Translations under genes and position numbers: made by a program
Shown: one piece after another, positions 39,170-63,330 of the stretch
Layout: every line of letters starts with the position of its first letter
Position numbering within the stretch: position 1 is the first letter of the stretch
Notes under the pieces: generated by a model
What the model was told of the DNA's origin: nothing
The model's input: the letters and a program-made list of their open reading frames with translations, nothing else
Databases searched by the model: none
Virus record (IMG/VR): IMGVR_UViG_3300009104_001210
Coordinates: 124,001 to 188,000 of that record
Length of the DNA: 64,000 nt
Direction: 5' to 3' (one strand)

Positions 39170-39604
39170 GGGGCTGAATGGTTTCGACAGATGCTATTTG
39201 ATAATATAGTGCAACGGAGTTTGAGTAAGACTTGCTATAAAAGACTCACAAACCCAAAATGGCGATAAATCGCTACAAGGGTTGGAAATTGATTGGCATT
39301 TAGCCAATACCGAACAGATGTTTGACACTTATGTTGAACCTGCAAGGGCTTCCCAACCAACTTACGCATACGCATAAGTTACTGAGTTACCTAACACTCG
39401 GTCATAAAATGAGTTAGGTGGTAGGATGGTTGGTATATGTCTTTGAGTAGGAATTAGACGATAAAGAAACCTATCAGTTAAACTCATCTGAGTAAATGAG
39501 GTATGGTGGGTTGTTAGTTGACTACCGATTTGGAAACTAACTAAGTTGTAAATGACTATTTATTAAAAGTAGACTGGACGCGGGTTCGAATCCCGCCAGC
39601 TCCA
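39170..39604 (+). ncRNA. ssrA: tmRNA (one-piece)
   Basis: 5' GGGGCTGAATGGTTTCGAC, 3' T-arm GCGGG-TTCGAAT-CCCGC, acceptor CAGCTCC-A with G3:U70; internal ORF ending TAA 39375-77. Confidence 0.93.
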
Positions 39605-39624
39605 CTAAAATTGAGGAGAATATT

Positions 39625-42245: not shown

Positions 42246-42317
42246 GGCCCCATCGTCTAATGGTGAGGACGTCGCCCTTTCAAGGCGGAGATATGGGTTC
42301 GACTCCCGTTGGGGCTA
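42246..42317 (+). tRNA. tRNA-Glu(TTC)
   Basis: Full cloverleaf; loop CT-TTC-AA; no encoded CCA. Confidence 0.92.
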
Positions 42318-42318
42318 C

Positions 42319-42401
42319 GGGCAGGTAGCAAAGCGGTTAAATGCACCAAACCGTAAGTTTGGCGTCGTGAGACTACGGTGGTTCGAATCCATCCCTGCCC
42401 T
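42319..42401 (+). tRNA. tRNA-Tyr(GTA), atypical C33/G38/U73
   Basis: GGGCAGG/CCTGCCC acceptor, long variable arm, loop CC-GTA-AG. Confidence 0.8.
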
Positions 42402-42402
42402 C

Positions 42403-42475
42403 GGGGCTGTAGCTCATTTGGGAGAGCGCTTCCCTTGCACGGAAGAGGCAGCAGGTTCGATTCCTGTCAGCTCCA
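42403..42475 (+). tRNA. tRNA-Ala(TGC)
   Basis: G3:U70, loop CT-TGC-AC. Confidence 0.93.
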
Positions 42476-42476
42476 C

Positions 42477-43070
42477 ATGAAAAATCTATCTAGATCTGAA
42501 ATAAGAGAAATAAAGAATAACCAATCAGAGTTGTATATGGAAAATGATAACTTTAAAGTTATTATACCATATACACATGATGCAGTTAAGATATATGGTA
42601 AAGGTACTAGTTGGTGTGTTTCTTGGGCAAAAGACGAAGACTATCAGTTTTATAATAAAACAGGTAAAATTCTTTTAATACTTAAAAAGAATGTTCATAT
42701 TAAAGATAATACTGAAATAGATGATGTGTGTTATAAAGTATCTATGTGGATGCCATATCAAAAATATTTGCCACTATATAGAAATTTTGGAAAAGGTGGT
42801 ATAGAAGATATAGCTAAAAGATATGAGTCCGATAAAGAGTTATATAAAAGCGTATTAAATGGTTATGTAAATTCGGTTGATGGTATTACTATTCATAAAA
42901 TAACAGCAGATTTTGAATATTATGATGCTGATGATGCGCATTGTTTTATGCCTGTAAAGTATATAGAAGGAGATAAAGTAGTTTGCATAGATAGAGATTG
43001 GGAATTAGATTGGGAAATATTTGATAGTATAAGATATAAGTATGAATATGAGTGGCAATTTGAAGGATAA
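42477..43070 (+). CDS. Hypothetical protein (GTSWC motif)
   Basis: ATG one base after the tRNA-Ala discriminator; upstream track start lies inside tRNAs. Confidence 0.6.
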   Translation: MKNLSRSEIREIKNNQSELYMENDNFKVIIPYTHDAVKIYGKGTSWCVSWAKDEDYQFYNKTGKILLILKKNVHIKDNTEIDDVCYKVSMWMPYQKYLPLYRNFGKGGIEDIAKRYESDKELYKSVLNGYVNSVDGITIHKITADFEYYDADDAHCFMPVKYIEGDKVVCIDRDWELDWEIFDSIRYKYEYEWQFEG

Positions 43071-43074
43071 TAAT

Positions 43075-43148
43075 GTGCTGGTGCCGGAGTGGTCTAACGG
43101 GGTGGGTTGCAAACCCATTATTCACAGGTTCGAATCCTGTTCAGCACT
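43075..43148 (+). tRNA. tRNA-Cys(GCA)
   Basis: Loop TT-GCA-AA, U73. Confidence 0.9.
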
Positions 43149-43301
43149 CATAACTAAGGAGAAATACCAATGTAATATACAACACTAAATATAAGATTAG
43201 GGTTTAGCAGTACCAATATATAAACTGTCGGTGTTTAAAGTACACCACAAAATTTAGTGTACGGATGGTATCTAAAGAGGGACGGAGGCGGGAAAAAATT
43301 A

Positions 43302-43374
43302 GCCACTTTAGCTCAGTTGGTAGAGCAGCTCACTTGTAATGAGCAGGTCCTCAGTTCGAGTCTGAGAAGTGGCT
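43302..43374 (+). tRNA. tRNA-Thr(TGT)
   Basis: GCCACTT/AAGTGGC acceptor, loop CT-TGT-AA. Confidence 0.93.
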
Positions 43375-58470: not shown

Positions 58471-58947
58471 ATGACTAAAATCGCATTTCGTACAAACATC
58501 CCTTACTTCGATAGGGATTCTTTTTTGACCCCGTTTGATAAAATATTCGATCAAATGGTTGAAACTCATTATCCAGAAATAACAAAATCCGTTGGTGTAA
58601 AACCATATGGTAATACTGCATATCCAAAAGTTAACGTATATGAATACGACGACAAAGTGGGTATTGTAGCAGAGATTCCTGGATTAAACAAGAAACAACT
58701 CAAAGTAGATGTTGAAGATGGAACTCTTACAATATCTGGAGATAAACACGGTTCTTTAATGAAAGATCAAGGTGCTAGAGTTATCCGTAAGGAATTAAAG
58801 CAATCTTCATTTAAAAGACAATTTGAATTGGGTGAGTTGTTAGATGGTGAGAACATTTCAGCCAATTTTAAGGATGGAATTTTATCTGTCTCAATTCCTA
58901 AGATGGAGCAGGAACAACCGAAGAAGACTACTGTAAAAATATCCTAA
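58471..58947 (+). CDS. Small heat-shock protein Hsp20
   Basis: YPKVNV, AEIPG, DGTLTISG, FKRQF, ANFKDGILSV. Confidence 0.92.
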   Translation: MTKIAFRTNIPYFDRDSFLTPFDKIFDQMVETHYPEITKSVGVKPYGNTAYPKVNVYEYDDKVGIVAEIPGLNKKQLKVDVEDGTLTISGDKHGSLMKDQGARVIRKELKQSSFKRQFELGELLDGENISANFKDGILSVSIPKMEQEQPKKTTVKIS

Positions 58948-59148
58948 ATGAAGGAAATGATACGCATCGGAGATGATGTGTATGTTCTACTTGGAACTGT
59001 ATCGGTAAGTTCTGGTTACACAATTGATGAACTAAAAAATATGTATTCACTTGCGGATACAGTTCTGAGAAAGAATGATTTGTGGTATATTACCCATAAA
59101 ACCATAGTTGCTGAATTTGAAGATATTATAGATAAAAAAGACAGTTAA
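58948..59148 (+). CDS. Hypothetical protein
   Basis: TAAATG-coupled. Confidence 0.55.
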   Translation: MKEMIRIGDDVYVLLGTVSVSSGYTIDELKNMYSLADTVLRKNDLWYITHKTIVAEFEDIIDKKDS

Positions 59149-59205
59149 GTAAATATATATTCTATTTATAATTGTATTAATAAACAGATATTAAAGGAGA
59201 ATTTT

Positions 59206-59391
59206 GTGGATGATTTTTTTGATAAATTATTTCAAAAAATAGCAGAATTTCATGAAAGAGAAATTCATATGAGTCAATCTTTAGCAGAGAATGATGAAGA
59301 CATACCAATGTATGTTTTAGAGAAGGCAAGACAAGATTTTCATCTTAAAGAATATTTGTGGTTTAATAGAGATAAGATACCTAGTGCATAA
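59206..59391 (+). CDS. Hypothetical protein
   Basis: AAGGAG SD, GTG start. Confidence 0.55.
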   Translation: MDDFFDKLFQKIAEFHEREIHMSQSLAENDEDIPMYVLEKARQDFHLKEYLWFNRDKIPSA

Positions 59392-59408
59392 TAACATTAA
59401 GGAGTTAC

Positions 59409-59588
59409 ATGAAATATCAACGTACTGTAGAAGAAAGACTTGATCAATTATTACAAGTTATTGAAAGACTCATTGAAAGAGTAACAGATAATACTATTGA
59501 TAGAGATGATCTTTCTAATCAATTAAGTAATTTACATGAAAGATTAGAACAAGTACATGGGTTAGTAGAATTGGAAGATGAAGATTAG
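59409..59588 (+). CDS. Small coiled-coil protein (59 aa, not in ORF track)
   Basis: AAGGAG SD, heptad pattern. Confidence 0.55.
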   Translation: MKYQRTVEERLDQLLQVIERLIERVTDNTIDRDDLSNQLSNLHERLEQVHGLVELEDED

Positions 59589-59603
59589 AGAACTAAATAT
59601 TAT

Positions 59604-60437
59604 ATGCTTGAACGATTTAAAAACTTTAAATTATTAATCGGTATATCTGCTTTAACAGTAGCAGGGTCAGCAGCGTTCTTTTCAGTATTTGGTTTATCAA
59701 AGTTATTTTCAGGAGCACAAACTTCAGTAATTATAATGGCAGGTTCATTAGAGTTTACTAAACTTGTAGCCGCTTCATTTTTATATCAGTATTGGTATAG
59801 AGCCAGTAAGATATTAAAAACTTATTTGGGTATTGGTGTGGTTACTTTAGTGTTAATAACTTCAGCAGGTATATTCGGATATCTATCAAATGCCTATCAA
59901 GGCGCAACAATTAATTTCGAAAAACAATCCACAACTTTATTATATAAAGAAGATAGATTAGAACAATTAGAAGATGATAAAACTTATCTAAAAGAAGAGT
60001 TAGAACAATCTATTGCTTCTTTACCAGAAAATTATATTACAGCAAAAAGAAAACTTCGTGAAGATTATAATCCAAAAGTATTAGCAGTCAATGATGAGAT
60101 ATTAAAAATTAAACAAGAGATTGGTGATTTAAAAGTTGAATTAATAGAAACTGGGGTGGATGTGGGTCCCGCAATTTATTTGGCAAGAGTATTTGGAACT
60201 GATGTAGATACAGTTGTAAAGTTCTTTATATTCATTTTAATTTTTGTATTCGATCCAATGGCATTAGCTATGGTATTAGCATGGAATACTGCACTTGGTA
60301 GAAGAAGTTTTGAAGTATATGAAGAGGGTGATAAAAAGGAAAAAGAAAAGGGTGATAAAAATAAAAAAGAAAGAAAAGTCCTAACAGGCCCCGAATTTGA
60401 TGATAGACCACGAAAGGGAAGTGTAAAAATTGTATAA
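59604..60437 (+). CDS. Conserved phage membrane protein (TM-coiled coil-TM)
   Basis: AFFSVFGLSKLFSGA, GIFGYLS, VGPAIYLA, IFVFDPMA. Confidence 0.65.
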   Translation: MLERFKNFKLLIGISALTVAGSAAFFSVFGLSKLFSGAQTSVIIMAGSLEFTKLVAASFLYQYWYRASKILKTYLGIGVVTLVLITSAGIFGYLSNAYQGATINFEKQSTTLLYKEDRLEQLEDDKTYLKEELEQSIASLPENYITAKRKLREDYNPKVLAVNDEILKIKQEIGDLKVELIETGVDVGPAIYLARVFGTDVDTVVKFFIFILIFVFDPMALAMVLAWNTALGRRSFEVYEEGDKKEKEKGDKNKKERKVLTGPEFDDRPRKGSVKIV

Positions 60438-60459
60438 TAAAAATTTCACATACCGCGGG

Positions 60460-60510
60460 GGTGATAACCGAAAACAGGCAGTTGACGCACCTGTAGAAAA
60501 ATGCGTCTTA
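60460..60510 (+). promoter_or_regulatory. Candidate cis-regulatory H-type pseudoknot in the TBDR leader
   Basis: S1 ACAGG 60474-78/CCTGT 60490-94; S2 GACGCA 60484-89/TGCGTC 60502-07. Confidence 0.55.
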
Positions 60511-60537
60511 CACTAAAAAAAAACGAGGAGACGTTTC

Positions 60538-63330
60538 ATGAAAAACAAACGTAATCTAATCTCATTGGTAATAACATTTCTAATGCCTATGTTCATTTAT
60601 GGACAAAGTGTTAGTGGTACGGTTGCTGATGAGGCAGGGAATCCTTTGGCTGGAGCTAATGTAGTTGTACAAGGAACTGATTTGGGTGCCGCTTCTTTGG
60701 AAGATGGTACTTATTCGATTAAAATCGGAGAAGGTTCACATACACTAATAGCTTCTGTTATCGGGTATGAATCATCTTCACAAACAGTAGATGTTAGTGG
60801 AGATATTAGTCTCGACTTTAGCTTAGCGGTTTCCGCAGTCGAGATGTCAGCATTGGAAGTTTTGGCTTCCCGTGCAGGCGAAAAAACACCTGTTGCTTAT
60901 ACTACGGTAGAAAAAGCAGATATGGAATTCCGTCTTGGTAGTCAAGACCTTCCAATGGCGCTTAATCTAACACCATCAGTATATGCTACGCAACAAGGTG
61001 GTGGTGCGGGTGATGCTCGTATCAATGTTCGAGGTTTTAATCAACGGAATGTAGCAGTAATGATTAATGGAGTACCACAAAATGATATGGAAAACGGTTG
61101 GGTTTATTGGTCCAATTGGGATGGTGTAGCAGATGCTGCACATTCTATCCAGATGCAACGTGGTTTAAGTGCTGTTAATTTAGCTACACCTTCCATTGGT
61201 GGAACTATGAACATAATTACAGACCCTACCTCTCACATAAAGGGTGGTAAGGTAAAACAAGAAGTTGGTGCTGGTGATTTTCTTAAAACTACAGTAAACT
61301 ATAATACTGGCTTGATAGGTGATAAATTTGCCTTGAGTGGTACAGTAGTACGTAAAACTGGTGGTGGAATCATTGACAAAACGTGGACAGATGCTTGGGC
61401 ATATTACTTTGGTGCAAGTTACGCACTAAATGCTGATAACCGATTTGAATTATACGCAATCGGTGCGCCACAGCGACACGCACACAATCTATATAAACAG
61501 AATATTGGTGCATATGATGCTGATTTTGCTGCAAGTATAGATGGATATGATACTGAAGCACTTGGTGAAGATGGTAAGTTCAAGGATGTTGGACGTACAT
61601 TTAATCAAAATTGGTCTCCAGTAGACCCATCATATACAGGTAAACAATACTATTATATGTATGGTGCTAAAACAGTAGCAAGACACGATCCCAACTTTAT
61701 TAACGAAAGAGAAAATTTCTTTCACAAGCCTTTAGTAAACCTAAATCATTTTCTAACTATTAATGACAAAACAATGTTAAGTTCAGTATTGTATTGGAGT
61801 GGTGGTTCAGGTGGTGGTACAGGTACTTATGGTAGGATTCCTACTATGGATGCTGATGGTAATCTTGGTGATGATGACTATAAATTTTATTATGGTCGTT
61901 CTCCCTGGACACGTGATTGGAATGCTCTTATCGCTATGAATAGTGGTGATTCTGATACAGTTTATGTAGACAAAAGAGTAATCACACGCACACATGGTAT
62001 TGATAATAATCAATCTGTAGGTATTTTGAGAAATAGCATTAATCGTCAGAATACATATGGCCTTATTTCTAAACTTAATTATGATGTAAGTGATGAACTT
62101 CAATTACAATTAGGTATAGATTGGAGAACTGCTGGTATAGAACACGCACGTGAAGTACGTGATCTAATGGGTGGTGATTATTATGTGGATTATGCTGATG
62201 ATAATGTACCTGATGGTAAAAGAGTTGGATTAGGTGATATAATCGCTTATCATAACTCAACCACAGTTGATTGGTTAGGTGGATTCTTACAAGGAGCTTA
62301 TGCTTCAGGTCCACTTTCAGCCTATGGTATGGTAGGATTATCACAGATTGGATATTCATATCAAGACCATTTTACTGTAGCCGATGAGAAGATTGTAGCA
62401 GATCCTATTTCCACTTTACAATGGAAAGGTGGGGCAATGTATGATGTTACTGATAACGTTTCAGTTTTTGGTAATTTTGGTATTGTTGAAAAGCCACCAA
62501 TTATGGATAATGTAATCTATTATGATGGTACGGTTGCTTCAGATCCTGCAAATGAAAGATTTGTAAGTTCAGAAGCTGGTGCTCACTACGCGACGGATAA
62601 AGTAGCAGTTAAAGTGTCTGCATATAATACAGATTGGAAAGACAGAAACCTTACCAAATCTGTAACAAGCGGACAAGGTTCAAGCGGTGATACTGATGTG
62701 ATTTTCCTTTCGGGGATAAATCAGAATCATAAAGGTGTTGAAGTTGAAGCTTCTACACAAGTACTTGATGTACTTAACTTACAAGCTATAGTAAGTCTTG
62801 GTACTTGGAAGTTTGTAGGTGATGCAGCAGGTAACTATCAAGAAGATGAGTTTAACGAAGAAGGTCAAGTTATCGGACAGACAACTACACCTTATTCTTA
62901 CGCACTTGATGGTTTGTTTGTTGGTGATATGCCTCAAACATCTTACGCACTTGTTGGAACGCTTACACCAATTAAAGGTCTAAAAATGCAAGCAGTATAC
63001 AAACAGTATGATAATAATTATGCTGATTGGAGTCCTGACGCTCGTGAGTATGATGGCTCAGATGCTGGTGCAGATAGAGAACAAGTATGGATGGCACCTG
63101 GATATTCCAGAGTTGACTTACATGCTTCATATGCTCTACCTTCAATTGGTGGTATGGATTTTACCGCATTTGCTCATGTATTTAATGCAACAGATGCAAC
63201 ATACATTCAAGATGCAGTAGATCATAGTCAGTATAATAGCTACGGAGATAAAACTCACGCAGCACACAACGCTGAAGTTTTTCTTGGAACACCAAGATAC
63301 TTTAACGCAGGAATTTCTGTAAATTTCTAA
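60538..63330 (+). CDS. TonB-dependent outer-membrane receptor with N-terminal CarboxypepD_reg-like domain
   Basis: Signal peptide, VSGTV..GNPLAGANVVV, plug (INVRGFNQRNVAVMINGVP), beta-barrel ending in Phe. Confidence 0.92.
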   Translation: MKNKRNLISLVITFLMPMFIYGQSVSGTVADEAGNPLAGANVVVQGTDLGAASLEDGTYSIKIGEGSHTLIASVIGYESSSQTVDVSGDISLDFSLAVSAVEMSALEVLASRAGEKTPVAYTTVEKADMEFRLGSQDLPMALNLTPSVYATQQGGGAGDARINVRGFNQRNVAVMINGVPQNDMENGWVYWSNWDGVADAAHSIQMQRGLSAVNLATPSIGGTMNIITDPTSHIKGGKVKQEVGAGDFLKTTVNYNTGLIGDKFALSGTVVRKTGGGIIDKTWTDAWAYYFGASYALNADNRFELYAIGAPQRHAHNLYKQNIGAYDADFAASIDGYDTEALGEDGKFKDVGRTFNQNWSPVDPSYTGKQYYYMYGAKTVARHDPNFINERENFFHKPLVNLNHFLTINDKTMLSSVLYWSGGSGGGTGTYGRIPTMDADGNLGDDDYKFYYGRSPWTRDWNALIAMNSGDSDTVYVDKRVITRTHGIDNNQSVGILRNSINRQNTYGLISKLNYDVSDELQLQLGIDWRTAGIEHAREVRDLMGGDYYVDYADDNVPDGKRVGLGDIIAYHNSTTVDWLGGFLQGAYASGPLSAYGMVGLSQIGYSYQDHFTVADEKIVADPISTLQWKGGAMYDVTDNVSVFGNFGIVEKPPIMDNVIYYDGTVASDPANERFVSSEAGAHYATDKVAVKVSAYNTDWKDRNLTKSVTSGQGSSGDTDVIFLSGINQNHKGVEVEASTQVLDVLNLQAIVSLGTWKFVGDAAGNYQEDEFNEEGQVIGQTTTPYSYALDGLFVGDMPQTSYALVGTLTPIKGLKMQAVYKQYDNNYADWSPDAREYDGSDAGADREQVWMAPGYSRVDLHASYALPSIGGMDFTAFAHVFNATDATYIQDAVDHSQYNSYGDKTHAAHNAEVFLGTPRYFNAGISVNF

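What the first reader, a model, noticed from the sequence alone, without database searches (positions are those of the whole stretch)
60460..60537. Riboswitch-like H-type pseudoknot before the TonB-dependent receptor
Seen: small GGT-GATA-ACC hairpin, then interlocked 5-bp and 6-bp helices with an A-rich loop 3, then CACTAAAAAAAAA and GAGGAG. The topology and the GGCAGTTGA / CACTAAAAA segments recall SAM-II/SAM-V, but the SAM-binding core is not clearly present. Established: TBDR leaders often carry ligand riboswitches. Inference: an orphan riboswitch whose ligand would reveal the receptor substrate.
Basis: partly seen in the sequence, partly recalled or inferred. Interest (0 to 1): 0.7.

Follow-up and report, generated by a model that had tools for sequence, protein, structure and literature searches.

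The report
Conserved pseudoknot leading phage receptor mRNA
The flagged stretch is a real, strongly conserved RNA pseudoknot in the leader of an outer-membrane receptor gene carried by abundant marine T4-like phages; it matches no known RNA family and looks more like a fixed expression-boosting leader than a ligand-sensing riboswitch.

Summary
The interlocked helices exist. S1 is 60474-60478 with 60490-60494, and S2 is 60484-60489 with 60502-60507. They are not chance: no shuffle of the leader gives such a knot, and 93 distinct homologous leaders keep both helices (97.7% of cells paired, S2 100%). Six of the 11 pairs show compensatory double changes, which recur many times on a gene tree.

The window lies in a 216-kb T4-like marine myovirus. 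The element occurs once per genome. In every case seen it sits before the same TonB-dependent-receptor-like gene, in more than 120 viral and more than 120 marine metagenome contigs. The closest cellular (Flavobacteriales) receptor genes lack it.

No Rfam family matches, including SAM-II, SAM-V, preQ1 and cobalamin. I found no terminator and no conserved pairing that competes with the ribosome-binding site. Each helix is stable alone.

The pseudoknot is followed by a 12-27 nt A-rich unstructured linker and a second conserved hairpin that encloses the start codon. This layout matches the T4 gene 32 leader and the tisB ribosome-standby site.

My best reading (0.45) is a constitutive 5' leader module that gives mRNA stability and/or ribosome standby. 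A riboswitch (0.15) or a protein operator (0.2) is not excluded.

In most relatives the gene sits right after a B12-dependent ribonucleotide reductase, which hints at cobalamin as the receptor's substrate.

The parts
60445..60453 (+). TTCACATAC, a conserved single-stranded motif 5' of the knot
   Evidence: Present with at most 1 mismatch in 146 of 222 distinct upstream flanks, 0-22 nt before S1. It is the only intergenic copy in the 216-kb genome. It moved with the cassette in this genome. The spacing is too variable and too short for a -10 box, so it is probably part of the RNA. Role unknown; a processing site is one idea.
60474..60478 (+). S1, 5' strand (ACAGG)
   Evidence: Pairs with 60490-60494. 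Pair 7:25 is CG in 82 sequences and UA in 11. Pair 8:24 is AU in 78 and UA in 15. The two G-C pairs next to the junction are invariant.
60479..60483 (+). L1 (CAGTT)
   Evidence: The first two bases, CA, are invariant in A1, the third is mostly G, and the last two are free. One natural variant has ATAAG (L344).
60484..60489 (+). S2, 5' strand (GACGCA)
   Evidence: Pairs with 60502-60507 in 100% of 93 sequences. Variants are GACACA/TGTGTC, GGCACA/TGTGCC, AGCACA/TGTGCT and AACACA/TGTGTT.
60490..60494 (+). S1, 3' strand (CCTGT)
   Evidence: Follows S2's 5' strand directly, with no L2, so the two helices can stack coaxially.
60495..60501 (+). L3 (AGAAAAA)
   Evidence: 7-9 nt long. The last five A are invariant and the first 2-4 nt vary.
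60502..60507 (+). S2, 3' strand (TGCGTC)
   Evidence: See S2 5' strand.
60508..60524 (+). Unstructured A-rich linker
   Evidence: 12-27 nt in relatives (median 17). Composition A 55%, U 22%, C 17%, G 6%. No self-structure in 83% of cases. The sequence is not conserved.
60525..60530 (+). Shine-Dalgarno-like GAGGAG
   Evidence: (A/G)AGGAG is conserved in the relatives examined. Phage genes as a whole show G enrichment at -11 to -8.
60527..60557 (+). Hairpin enclosing the start codon
   Evidence: GGA 60527-29 pairs with UCU 60555-57, and ACGUUU 60531-36 pairs with AAACGU 60547-52. In 86 distinct relatives the AUG is enclosed by at least 6 pairs in 93%, against 29% of this phage's other genes. Median dG is -6.0 against -2.25 kcal/mol. 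Spacers pair better than their own shuffles in 27 of 28 classes, with mean z -1.95. Compensatory changes include ACGTTT/AAACGT to ACTTTT/AAAAGT, which costs an Arg-to-Ser change.
60538..63330 (+). 930-aa TonB-dependent-receptor-like gene
   Evidence: Pfam hits CarbopepD_reg_2, Plug and CarboxypepD_reg. PF00593 is recorded on close relatives. The closest cellular homologues are Flavobacteriales, at 47-51% identity.

Best explanation
The element is the first part of a three-part, cis-acting mRNA leader that these phages use to get strong, durable expression of their receptor gene. The parts are:
1. [quoted passage not shown]
2. A 12-27 nt unstructured A-rich stretch.
3. A hairpin that holds part of the Shine-Dalgarno, the spacer and the AUG.

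Shown: the two interlocked helices, the unstructured linker and the start-codon hairpin are all under selection. The leader is transcribed together with the gene.

Inferred: the knot folds constitutively. Its junction would be locked by L1 bases in the deep groove of S2 and the A-run of L3 in the shallow groove of S1. I propose it does two things. It shields the 5' end from decay, as the T4 gene 32 leader does after RNase E processing. With the adjoining single strand, it also gives 30S subunits a standby landing site from which they enter the weakly closed ribosome-binding site, as in tisB mRNA. No small-molecule ligand is involved.
For: - Structure: covariation in both helices. Invariant bases cluster at the junction: the GG/CC of S1, the CA of L1, the last five A of L3 and the junction-side pairs of S2. 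The distal pairs and distal loop bases vary.
- Stability without ligand: S1 alone averages -4.0 and S2 alone -5.0 kcal/mol.
- No switch: knot-to-RBS complementarity does not exceed shuffles, and there is no terminator.
- Standby layout: the linker is unstructured and the RBS hairpin is conserved.
- Transcription: in two metatranscriptomes, contigs of relatives cover the leader at the same depth as the 5' part of the coding region (265 and 398 against 242-380; later, more conserved bins run higher). These contigs begin at 60475 and about 60481. In a run that holds this very strain, the gene is covered and the 1.5 kb upstream is not.
- Specificity: there is one copy per genome. It stands before this gene in every instance checked. 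It moved with the gene when the cassette changed place.
- Precedents: in tisB mRNA a 5' pseudoknot plus a single-stranded region form an S1-dependent standby site for a sequestered RBS (PMC7708055; PMC6690012). T4 gene 32 mRNA is cut by RNase E at -71, carries a pseudoknot from about -67 followed by an unstructured A/U-rich region to the RBS, and is the most stable T4 mRNA (PMC3014915). Here the knot starts 64 nt before the AUG, and the phage is T4-like.
Against: - No half-life, toeprint or binding data exist.
- The 5'-end evidence is weak. The runs are assembled contigs without strand, and assemblers break where conserved sequence meets strain-specific sequence. Three metagenome contigs (sample type not checked) also start 3-4 nt before the knot. 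One RNA contig runs 107 nt further upstream.
- A purely protective or standby structure would not obviously need 17 invariant positions, which suggests a specific partner.
- If the host is a Flavobacterium, Shine-Dalgarno use and S1 behaviour may differ from E. coli (my own knowledge, not tested here).
Confidence: 0.45

Rival explanations
1. Translational operator for a protein. A phage protein (for example its gp32-type single-strand-binding protein, by analogy with T4) or a host protein recognises the knot. It then spreads over or blocks the adjoining unstructured stretch and ribosome-binding site, tying receptor synthesis to the state of replication or infection.
For: The layout matches the T4 gene 32 operator: a knot, then an unstructured A-rich region, then the RBS (PMC3014915). 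The phage encodes a gp32 homologue. In 127 of 172 distinct contexts the cassette sits in the replication module, between class II ribonucleotide reductase and DNA polymerase B. The many invariant loop bases suggest a specific partner.
Against: In T4 the operator regulates gene 32 itself, but here the product is an outer-membrane protein that cannot bind its own mRNA. The phage's own gene 32 leader shows no copy of this knot.
Confidence: 0.2
2. Orphan riboswitch. The knot is a small aptamer of preQ1-I size whose ligand, possibly linked to the receptor's substrate, changes how well the downstream ribosome-binding site is used.
For: A 34-nt core has covarying stems and invariant junction and loop bases. 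The P1 plus A-rich 3' loop arrangement resembles preQ1-I and SAM-II (my own knowledge). Receptor genes of this class are often riboswitch-controlled in bacteria. The start-codon hairpin could serve as the output module.
Against: No Rfam aptamer matches. The Shine-Dalgarno is not part of the knot. There is no conserved alternative pairing between knot and RBS and no terminator. S2 is 6 bp, always paired and stable without ligand. There is no L2 to form a pocket wall. The closest cellular homologues carry neither this motif nor any Rfam riboswitch.
Confidence: 0.15
3. Transcription-level element. The nascent knot acts on RNA polymerase (processive antitermination, as the put RNAs of HK022 do) or on Rho loading, so that the 2.8-kb gene is fully transcribed.
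For: It is a promoter-proximal, sense-strand structure with invariant loops. The linker is G-poor and unstructured.
Against: No terminators to be overridden are seen near it. The linker is far shorter than a Rho loading site. The tight coupling to an RBS hairpin points to translation. The put comparison rests on my own knowledge only.
Confidence: 0.05

Closest known systems
T4 gene 32 mRNA leader (RNase E site at -71, pseudoknot, unstructured A/U region, RBS)
   Same: It comes from a T4-type phage. It has an H-type knot with two coaxial stems about 65 nt before the AUG. An unstructured A-rich stretch runs from the knot to the RBS. The mRNA is very abundant or stable. A conserved single-stranded motif lies just upstream of the knot (PMC3014915).
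   Different: There is no sequence similarity. The downstream gene is an outer-membrane receptor, not the single-strand-binding protein, so autoregulation is impossible. L1 is 5 nt with a conserved CA (1 nt in T2 gene 32, from memory). An extra start-codon hairpin is present. Binding by gp32 and cutting by RNase E are untested.
tisB +42 mRNA standby site (5' pseudoknot plus single-stranded region, S1-dependent)
   Same: A 5' knot, an adjoining single strand and a sequestered RBS are the three parts that paper defines (PMC7708055; PMC6690012).
   Different: In tisB the single strand lies about 100 nt from a strongly closed RBS. Here it is 12-27 nt long, directly abuts the RBS, and the RBS hairpin is only about -6 kcal/mol. 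tisB is a chromosomal toxin gene, not a phage gene. There is no sequence similarity.
Small H-type pseudoknot riboswitches (preQ1-I, SAM-II, SAM-V)
   Same: Same size class. A 5-bp first helix has an A-rich 3' loop that could lie in its minor groove. Invariant bases sit at the junction (the comparison is from my own knowledge).
   Different: No covariance-model match. The second helix is long and ligand-independent. There is no L2. The Shine-Dalgarno lies outside the knot. No switching partner is seen.
Luteovirus-type compact triplex pseudoknots (for example the BWYV frameshift signal)
   Same: A 5-bp G-C-rich S1 ends in GG, L1 begins with CA, and a 7-nt A-rich loop crosses S1. That is the pattern expected for a mechanically rigid knot (from memory, not tested).
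   Different: Those knots sit inside coding regions and stall ribosomes for frameshifting. This one is intergenic, with S2 of 6 bp and L1 of 5 nt.

Membership tests
SAM-II (RF00521) / SAM-V (RF01826) | Match to the family covariance model (sequence plus structure of the SAM-binding core) | tested here: not met
   No hit at the gathering score in the window. No hit at E<=10 in 60380-60600 or in 12 homologous loci.
preQ1-I (RF00522) | Covariance-model match; a short P2 closed only with ligand; an L2 cytosine pocket; the Shine-Dalgarno or a terminator overlapping P2 | tested here: not met
   No model hit. S2 is 6 bp and paired in 100% of sequences. L2 has length 0. The Shine-Dalgarno lies 12-27 nt downstream.
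Cobalamin riboswitch | Covariance-model match to the roughly 100-200 nt aptamer with the B12 box | tested here: not met
   No Rfam hit. The whole leader is only 100 nt.
Riboswitch (generic) | Conserved aptamer with covarying stems | tested here: met
Riboswitch (generic) | Expression platform: a terminator, or RBS pairing that excludes the aptamer fold | tested here: not met
   No + strand terminator. The knot-versus-RBS duplex energy is no better than for shuffled knots, z +0.46.
Riboswitch (generic) | Direct, specific binding of a small molecule | not testable with these tools
T4 gene 32-type translational operator | 5' pseudoknot followed by an unstructured A/U-rich stretch that reaches the RBS | tested here: met
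   definition from PMC3014915.
T4 gene 32-type translational operator | The regulated gene encodes the single-strand-binding protein that binds the operator | tested here: not met
   The downstream gene is a receptor-like outer-membrane protein. gp32 is encoded elsewhere (genome 103764-104300) with a different leader.
T4 gene 32-type translational operator | Endonucleolytic processing just 5' of the knot that gives a stable mRNA | tested here: inconclusive
   RNA contigs at depth 242-341 begin at 60475 and about 60481. However, three metagenome contigs also break there, and one RNA contig reads through.
Ribosome standby site (tisB type) | 5' structured element (pseudoknot), single-stranded region and structurally sequestered RBS | tested here: met
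   definition from PMC7708055.
Ribosome standby site (tisB type) | S1/30S binding to the knot plus single strand, needed for translation | not testable with these tools
   Needs toeprinting and filter binding. The complex predictor gave no verdict for RNA.

The most novel reading that the evidence does not exclude
The knot is the aptamer of a new, phage-specific riboswitch class. Alternatively it is a gene-32-like operator through which the phage's single-strand-binding protein couples import of a cofactor (probably cobalamin for the neighbouring B12-dependent ribonucleotide reductase) to DNA replication. In either case it would be an active sensor on the mRNA of a virus-encoded outer-membrane transporter.
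Probability: 0.15. Interest if true: 0.85.

Novelty: new variant of a known kind. Interest (0 to 1): 0.6.

Why it matters
The motif is a well-supported structured RNA family with no Rfam entry. It is confined to a widespread group of marine T4-like phages, probably of Flavobacteriales, and it heads an mRNA that reaches depths of hundreds in ocean metatranscriptomes.

It would be a second natural example, after T4 gene 32, of a phage leader built as a pseudoknot followed by a single strand and then the RBS. Here that leader is attached to an auxiliary gene rather than to a core replication gene.

The gene itself is notable. It is a virus-encoded TonB-dependent receptor, placed in most relatives between a B12-dependent ribonucleotide reductase and the DNA polymerase. 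This suggests that the phages equip infected cells to import cobalamin for nucleotide synthesis. Working out the leader would show how the phage secures that expression.

The 34-nt knot is also small enough for structural and biophysical work.

Tried and rejected
- **Known RNA families:** Rfam at gathering and permissive thresholds gave nothing relevant.
- **Nested folding of the window sequence:** not significant, as expected for a pseudoknot.
- **TTCACATAC as a general phage promoter:** rejected. It is the only intergenic copy in the genome, and its spacing to the knot is 0-22 nt. The phage's real recurrent intergenic motif is TATATTTAT(A).
- **Sigma-70 promoter scan:** nothing on the + strand near the leader.
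- **Minus-strand terminator:** the scan's site at 60494-60474 depends on a T-run that relatives lack, and the G-U pairs fit only the + strand.
- **S2's 3' strand re-pairing with GACG after the Shine-Dalgarno:** seen in the window, but it does not covary in relatives.
- **RNAalifold on the start region:** no consensus structure, because relatives use different pairing registers. I replaced it with per-sequence folds and spacer shuffles.
- **Readthrough or frameshift signal for the upstream gene:** rejected, because the element follows the receptor gene, not the reductase, when the two are separated.
- **Cellular origin of the contig:** rejected by the tail sheath, baseplate, fibre and gp32 genes. 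The pattern gave only seven matches in 185,579 species genomes: four on MAG contigs that carry the receptor leader, and three that lack it and look like chance.
- **Prior description:** literature searches found none. The IMG/VR catalogue of 8,495 candidate structured RNAs (PMC10690425) could contain it unnamed, but its supplements are not held.

Full report
**What is there.** The 100-nt gap between the stop of a 277-aa ORF (60437) and the ATG at 60538 holds, in order:
- TTCACATAC (60445-60453).
- S1 5' ACAGG (60474-78), L1 CAGTT (60479-83), S2 5' GACGCA (60484-89), S1 3' CCTGT (60490-94), L3 AGAAAAA (60495-501) and S2 3' TGCGTC (60502-07).
- An A-rich stretch (60508-24), then GAGGAG (60525-30).

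The downstream ORF (60538-63330, 930 aa) carries CarboxypepD_reg-like and Plug domains. Close relatives also score PF00593.

**Is it more than chance?** None of 3000 shuffles of the leader has a Watson-Crick 5+6 bp H-type knot with comparable loops, and only 8 of 1278 tiles of the window do. The nested MFE is unremarkable (z -0.25), which says nothing about a pseudoknot.

The decisive evidence is comparative. A protein-guided scan found 307 viral contigs that encode relatives of the receptor at 65-100% identity. Every one that includes upstream sequence has the same knot.

Alignment A1, of 93 distinct leaders, gives these figures:
- 97.7% of cells are paired, and S2 is paired in 100%.
- 6 of 11 pairs show double changes.
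- 76 cells are compensatory, against 15.7 in shuffles.
- 0 of 500 shuffles reach the observed score.
- Pairing collapses when the partners are slid.

On a tree built from 1.2 kb of coding sequence only (190 sequences), pair 19:38 switches between A-U and G-C at least 18 times and 17:40 changes 24 times. Pair 7:25 changes 9 times, 8:24 5 times and 16:41 7 times. Phage recombination may inflate these counts. No A-C mismatch was seen at the S2 positions where the pattern allowed one. G-U pairs occur in both helices, so the fold belongs to the sense strand.

Seventeen columns are invariant, and they lie around the helical junction:
- the two G-C pairs of S1 next to S2;
- the first two bases of L1 (CA);
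- the last five A of L3;
- the junction-side pairs of S2.

The distal pairs and distal loop bases vary freely. This is the pattern of a tightly packed triplex-type core.

**What carries it.** The window is bases 124001-188000 of a 216,422-bp IMG/VR virus record. The genome has 31% G+C, and 234 of 237 ORFs lie on one strand. It encodes a tail sheath, baseplate wedge and tail fibres and a gp32-type single-strand-binding protein. The nearest sheath proteins belong to Microcystis phage Mel-JY01 (47.5%) and Flavobacterium phages (39%). It is therefore a distant T4-like myovirus.

The receptor's best cellular relatives among 151 Flavobacteriales genomes reach 47-51% identity. This makes Flavobacteriales the likely source and host. 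Those cellular genes have neither the knot nor any Rfam riboswitch.

In 185,579 species genomes the pattern gave seven matches. Four carry the receptor leader, and all four are on MAG contigs labelled as unrelated taxa (a Methanobacteriota archaeon, a Flavobacteriales bacterium, a Pelagibacter and an unnamed bacterium), which suggests mis-binned phage DNA. The other three lack the leader and look like chance.

A covariance model finds a single copy in the phage genome. Every instance precedes the same gene. Of 80 further relatives, 77 match the pattern, two have slightly degenerate knots and one lacks upstream sequence.

**The rest of the leader.** After the knot comes a linker of 12-27 nt (median 17). 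It is A 55%, U 22%, C 17% and G 6%, unstructured in 83% of cases, and not conserved in sequence. An (A/G)AGGAG follows.

The spacer between that motif and the AUG pairs with codons 4-7 of the signal peptide, whose CGTAATCT is almost invariant even at synonymous sites. In the window, GGA pairs with UCU and ACGUUU pairs with AAACGU.

Across 86 distinct relatives the AUG is enclosed by at least 6 pairs in 93% and by at least 8 pairs in 74%. The figures for the phage's other genes are 29% and 10%. Median dG is -6.0 against -2.25 kcal/mol.

Spacers pair better than their own shuffles in 27 of 28 spacer classes, with mean z -1.95. Compensatory pairs are plain:
- ACGTTT/AAACGT becomes ACTTTT/AAAAGT, at the price of an Arg-to-Ser change.
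- Others are ACGCAA/AAGCGT, ACGTAA/ATACGT, ACGATA/TATCGT, GATTATA/TATAATC and GATTAC/GTAATC.

Relatives use different pairing registers, so RNAalifold sees no consensus. This second structure is therefore less firmly established than the knot.

**Is it a riboswitch?** No Rfam family matches, at the gathering score or at E<=10, in the window or in 12 homologous loci. This rules out membership of SAM-II, SAM-V, preQ1 and cobalamin.

I looked for an expression platform and found none:
- There is no + strand terminator.
- The Shine-Dalgarno lies outside the knot.
- The best duplex between knot and RBS region is weaker than for shuffled knots (mean z +0.46).
- The GACG after the Shine-Dalgarno could pair with S2's 3' strand in the window, but it does not follow S2's changes in relatives.

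Each helix is stable as an isolated hairpin (-4.0 and -5.0 kcal/mol on average), and S2 never loses a pair. So the fold should not need a ligand. These points lower the riboswitch reading but cannot exclude it. The invariant junction would also suit a binding pocket.

**Expression.** Public marine metatranscriptomes hold the gene. In a run that contains this very strain (contigs with no mismatches), the receptor gene is covered, while 58900-60348 upstream and the region beyond 63528 are not.

In two other runs, relatives reach word depths of 242 and 341. The leader bin (265 and 398) matches the 5' part of the coding region. The contigs begin at 60475 and about 60481, and another begins 14 nt before S1.

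This shows that the knot is transcribed with the gene, and it fits a 5' end close to the knot. I do not treat it as proof, for four reasons:
- Contigs carry no strand.
- Assemblers break where conserved sequence meets strain-specific sequence.
- Three metagenome contigs, whose sample type I did not check, start at the same place.
- One RNA contig continues 107 nt upstream, through TTCACATAC.

**The upstream motif.** TTCACATAC (at most 1 mismatch) is present in 146 of 222 distinct flanks, 0-22 nt before S1. It is the only intergenic copy in the genome. It therefore belongs to this cassette and is not a general promoter. The phage's recurrent intergenic motif is TATATTTAT(A), with 15 copies of which 12 are intergenic, including one before the sheath gene.

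The short and variable spacing argues against a -10 box and for a role in the RNA. By analogy with T4 gene 32 it could mark a processing site. The A/U-rich context recalls the RNase E preference I remember from the T4 literature, but I could not verify that consensus here.

**Genomic context.** In 127 of 172 distinct contexts the gene directly upstream is a class II (B12-dependent) ribonucleotide reductase. In 41 of 62 the gene downstream is DNA polymerase B.

In the window's own genome the reductase sits at 108319-110292, followed directly by the polymerase gene with no cassette between them. The whole cassette (motif, knot, linker, gene) lies 74 kb away. So the leader belongs to the receptor gene.

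The usual neighbourhood suggests that the receptor imports cobalamin for the phage reductase. JGI's automatic name for some relatives, 'outer membrane cobalamin receptor', agrees with this but is weak evidence. NCBIfam gives only sub-threshold matches over the first ~230 residues, to the SusC/RagA and haemoglobin/transferrin/lactoferrin receptor families.

**Mechanism.** The layout is a 5' knot, then a single strand, then a weakly closed RBS. It has two experimentally defined precedents.
- In tisB mRNA, a 5' pseudoknot and a single-stranded region form an S1-dependent standby site that lets 30S subunits reach a sequestered RBS (PMC7708055; PMC6690012).
- In T4, all gene 32 transcripts are cut by RNase E at -71. 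The resulting mRNA starts with a pseudoknot (from about -67), followed by an unstructured A/U-rich region to the RBS. It is the most stable T4 message, and gp32 binds the knot to repress translation (PMC3014915).

Here the knot begins 64 nt before the AUG, in a T4-like phage.

I therefore favour a constitutive leader that protects the 5' end and supplies a standby platform (0.45). A protein operator is second (0.2), a riboswitch third (0.15) and a transcription-level role last (0.05). The remainder is unassigned.

Shown: the structures, their selection, their exclusivity to this gene and their transcription. Inferred: every functional step.

**Novelty.** I found no description in Rfam or in the searched literature. 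A 2023 catalogue of 8,495 unnamed candidate structured RNAs from IMG/VR may include it, but I could not check its files. I rate it a new variant of a known kind: a phage mRNA leader pseudoknot of the gene 32 or standby type, attached to an auxiliary outer-membrane receptor gene.

**Limits.** Many of the leaders aligned were collected with a pattern that fixes the invariant bases, so conservation of those bases is partly built in. Covariation is not, since the pattern leaves the R/Y positions independent and does not include S1's 5' strand. The host is inferred only from homology. Both read-laying runs returned assembled contigs, not raw reads.

Noticed in passing
window 39170-39607 and 42246-43374: The phage carries a full-length tmRNA gene (77.5 bits, gathering score 47) and a cluster of five tRNA genes.
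   Followed up: no
window 58386 (TATATTTAT); genome-wide 15 copies: TATATTTAT(A) is about 50-fold enriched between genes (12 of 15 copies intergenic). It stands before the tail sheath and other structural genes, so it is probably this lineage's late promoter, replacing T4's TATAAATA.
   Followed up: partly
window 57863 and 63571: AAGGCTTG is a second motif enriched between genes (9 copies in the genome). It faintly recalls the T4 MotA box, a comparison from memory.
   Followed up: no
window 58471-58947: A phage-encoded HSP20/alpha-crystallin small heat-shock protein (Pfam E 1.8e-20).
   Followed up: no
L034:902-2905 and L013:5980-8472; genome 108319-110292: In most relatives the receptor gene lies between a class II (B12-dependent) ribonucleotide reductase and DNA polymerase B (127 of 172 and 41 of 62 contexts). 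In the window's own genome the cassette has moved 74 kb away. This suggests a virus-encoded cobalamin receptor serving the viral reductase.
   Followed up: partly
L202, L205, L207, L201 (genome contigs): Contigs with this phage leader and gene are binned in MAGs labelled Methanobacteriota archaeon, Flavobacteriales bacterium, Candidatus Pelagibacter and 'uncultured bacterium'. This is probably phage DNA mis-binned into MAGs.
   Followed up: partly
window 60550-60557 (CGTAATCT): The codons for Arg-Asn-Leu near the start of the signal peptide are almost invariant at the nucleotide level, including synonymous sites and the rare CGT codon in a 31% G+C genome. They form the 3' strand of the start-codon hairpin.
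   Followed up: yes
L019, L066, L070, L097 and L105, L115, L136, L143, L148 (linker): Some relatives carry a small palindromic hairpin inserted in the linker between knot and Shine-Dalgarno (TTCGTTAACGAA or TTCATTAATGAA).
   Followed up: no
whole genome (G000): 234 of 237 ORFs of at least 60 aa lie on one strand of a 216-kb genome with 31% G+C and 93% coding density.
   Followed up: no
L213:3588-3679 (leader of the gp32 homologue): The 92-nt leader of the phage's own gene 32 contains hairpin-forming repeats but no copy of the receptor-leader knot. Whether it has a T4-like operator of its own was not analysed.
   Followed up: no
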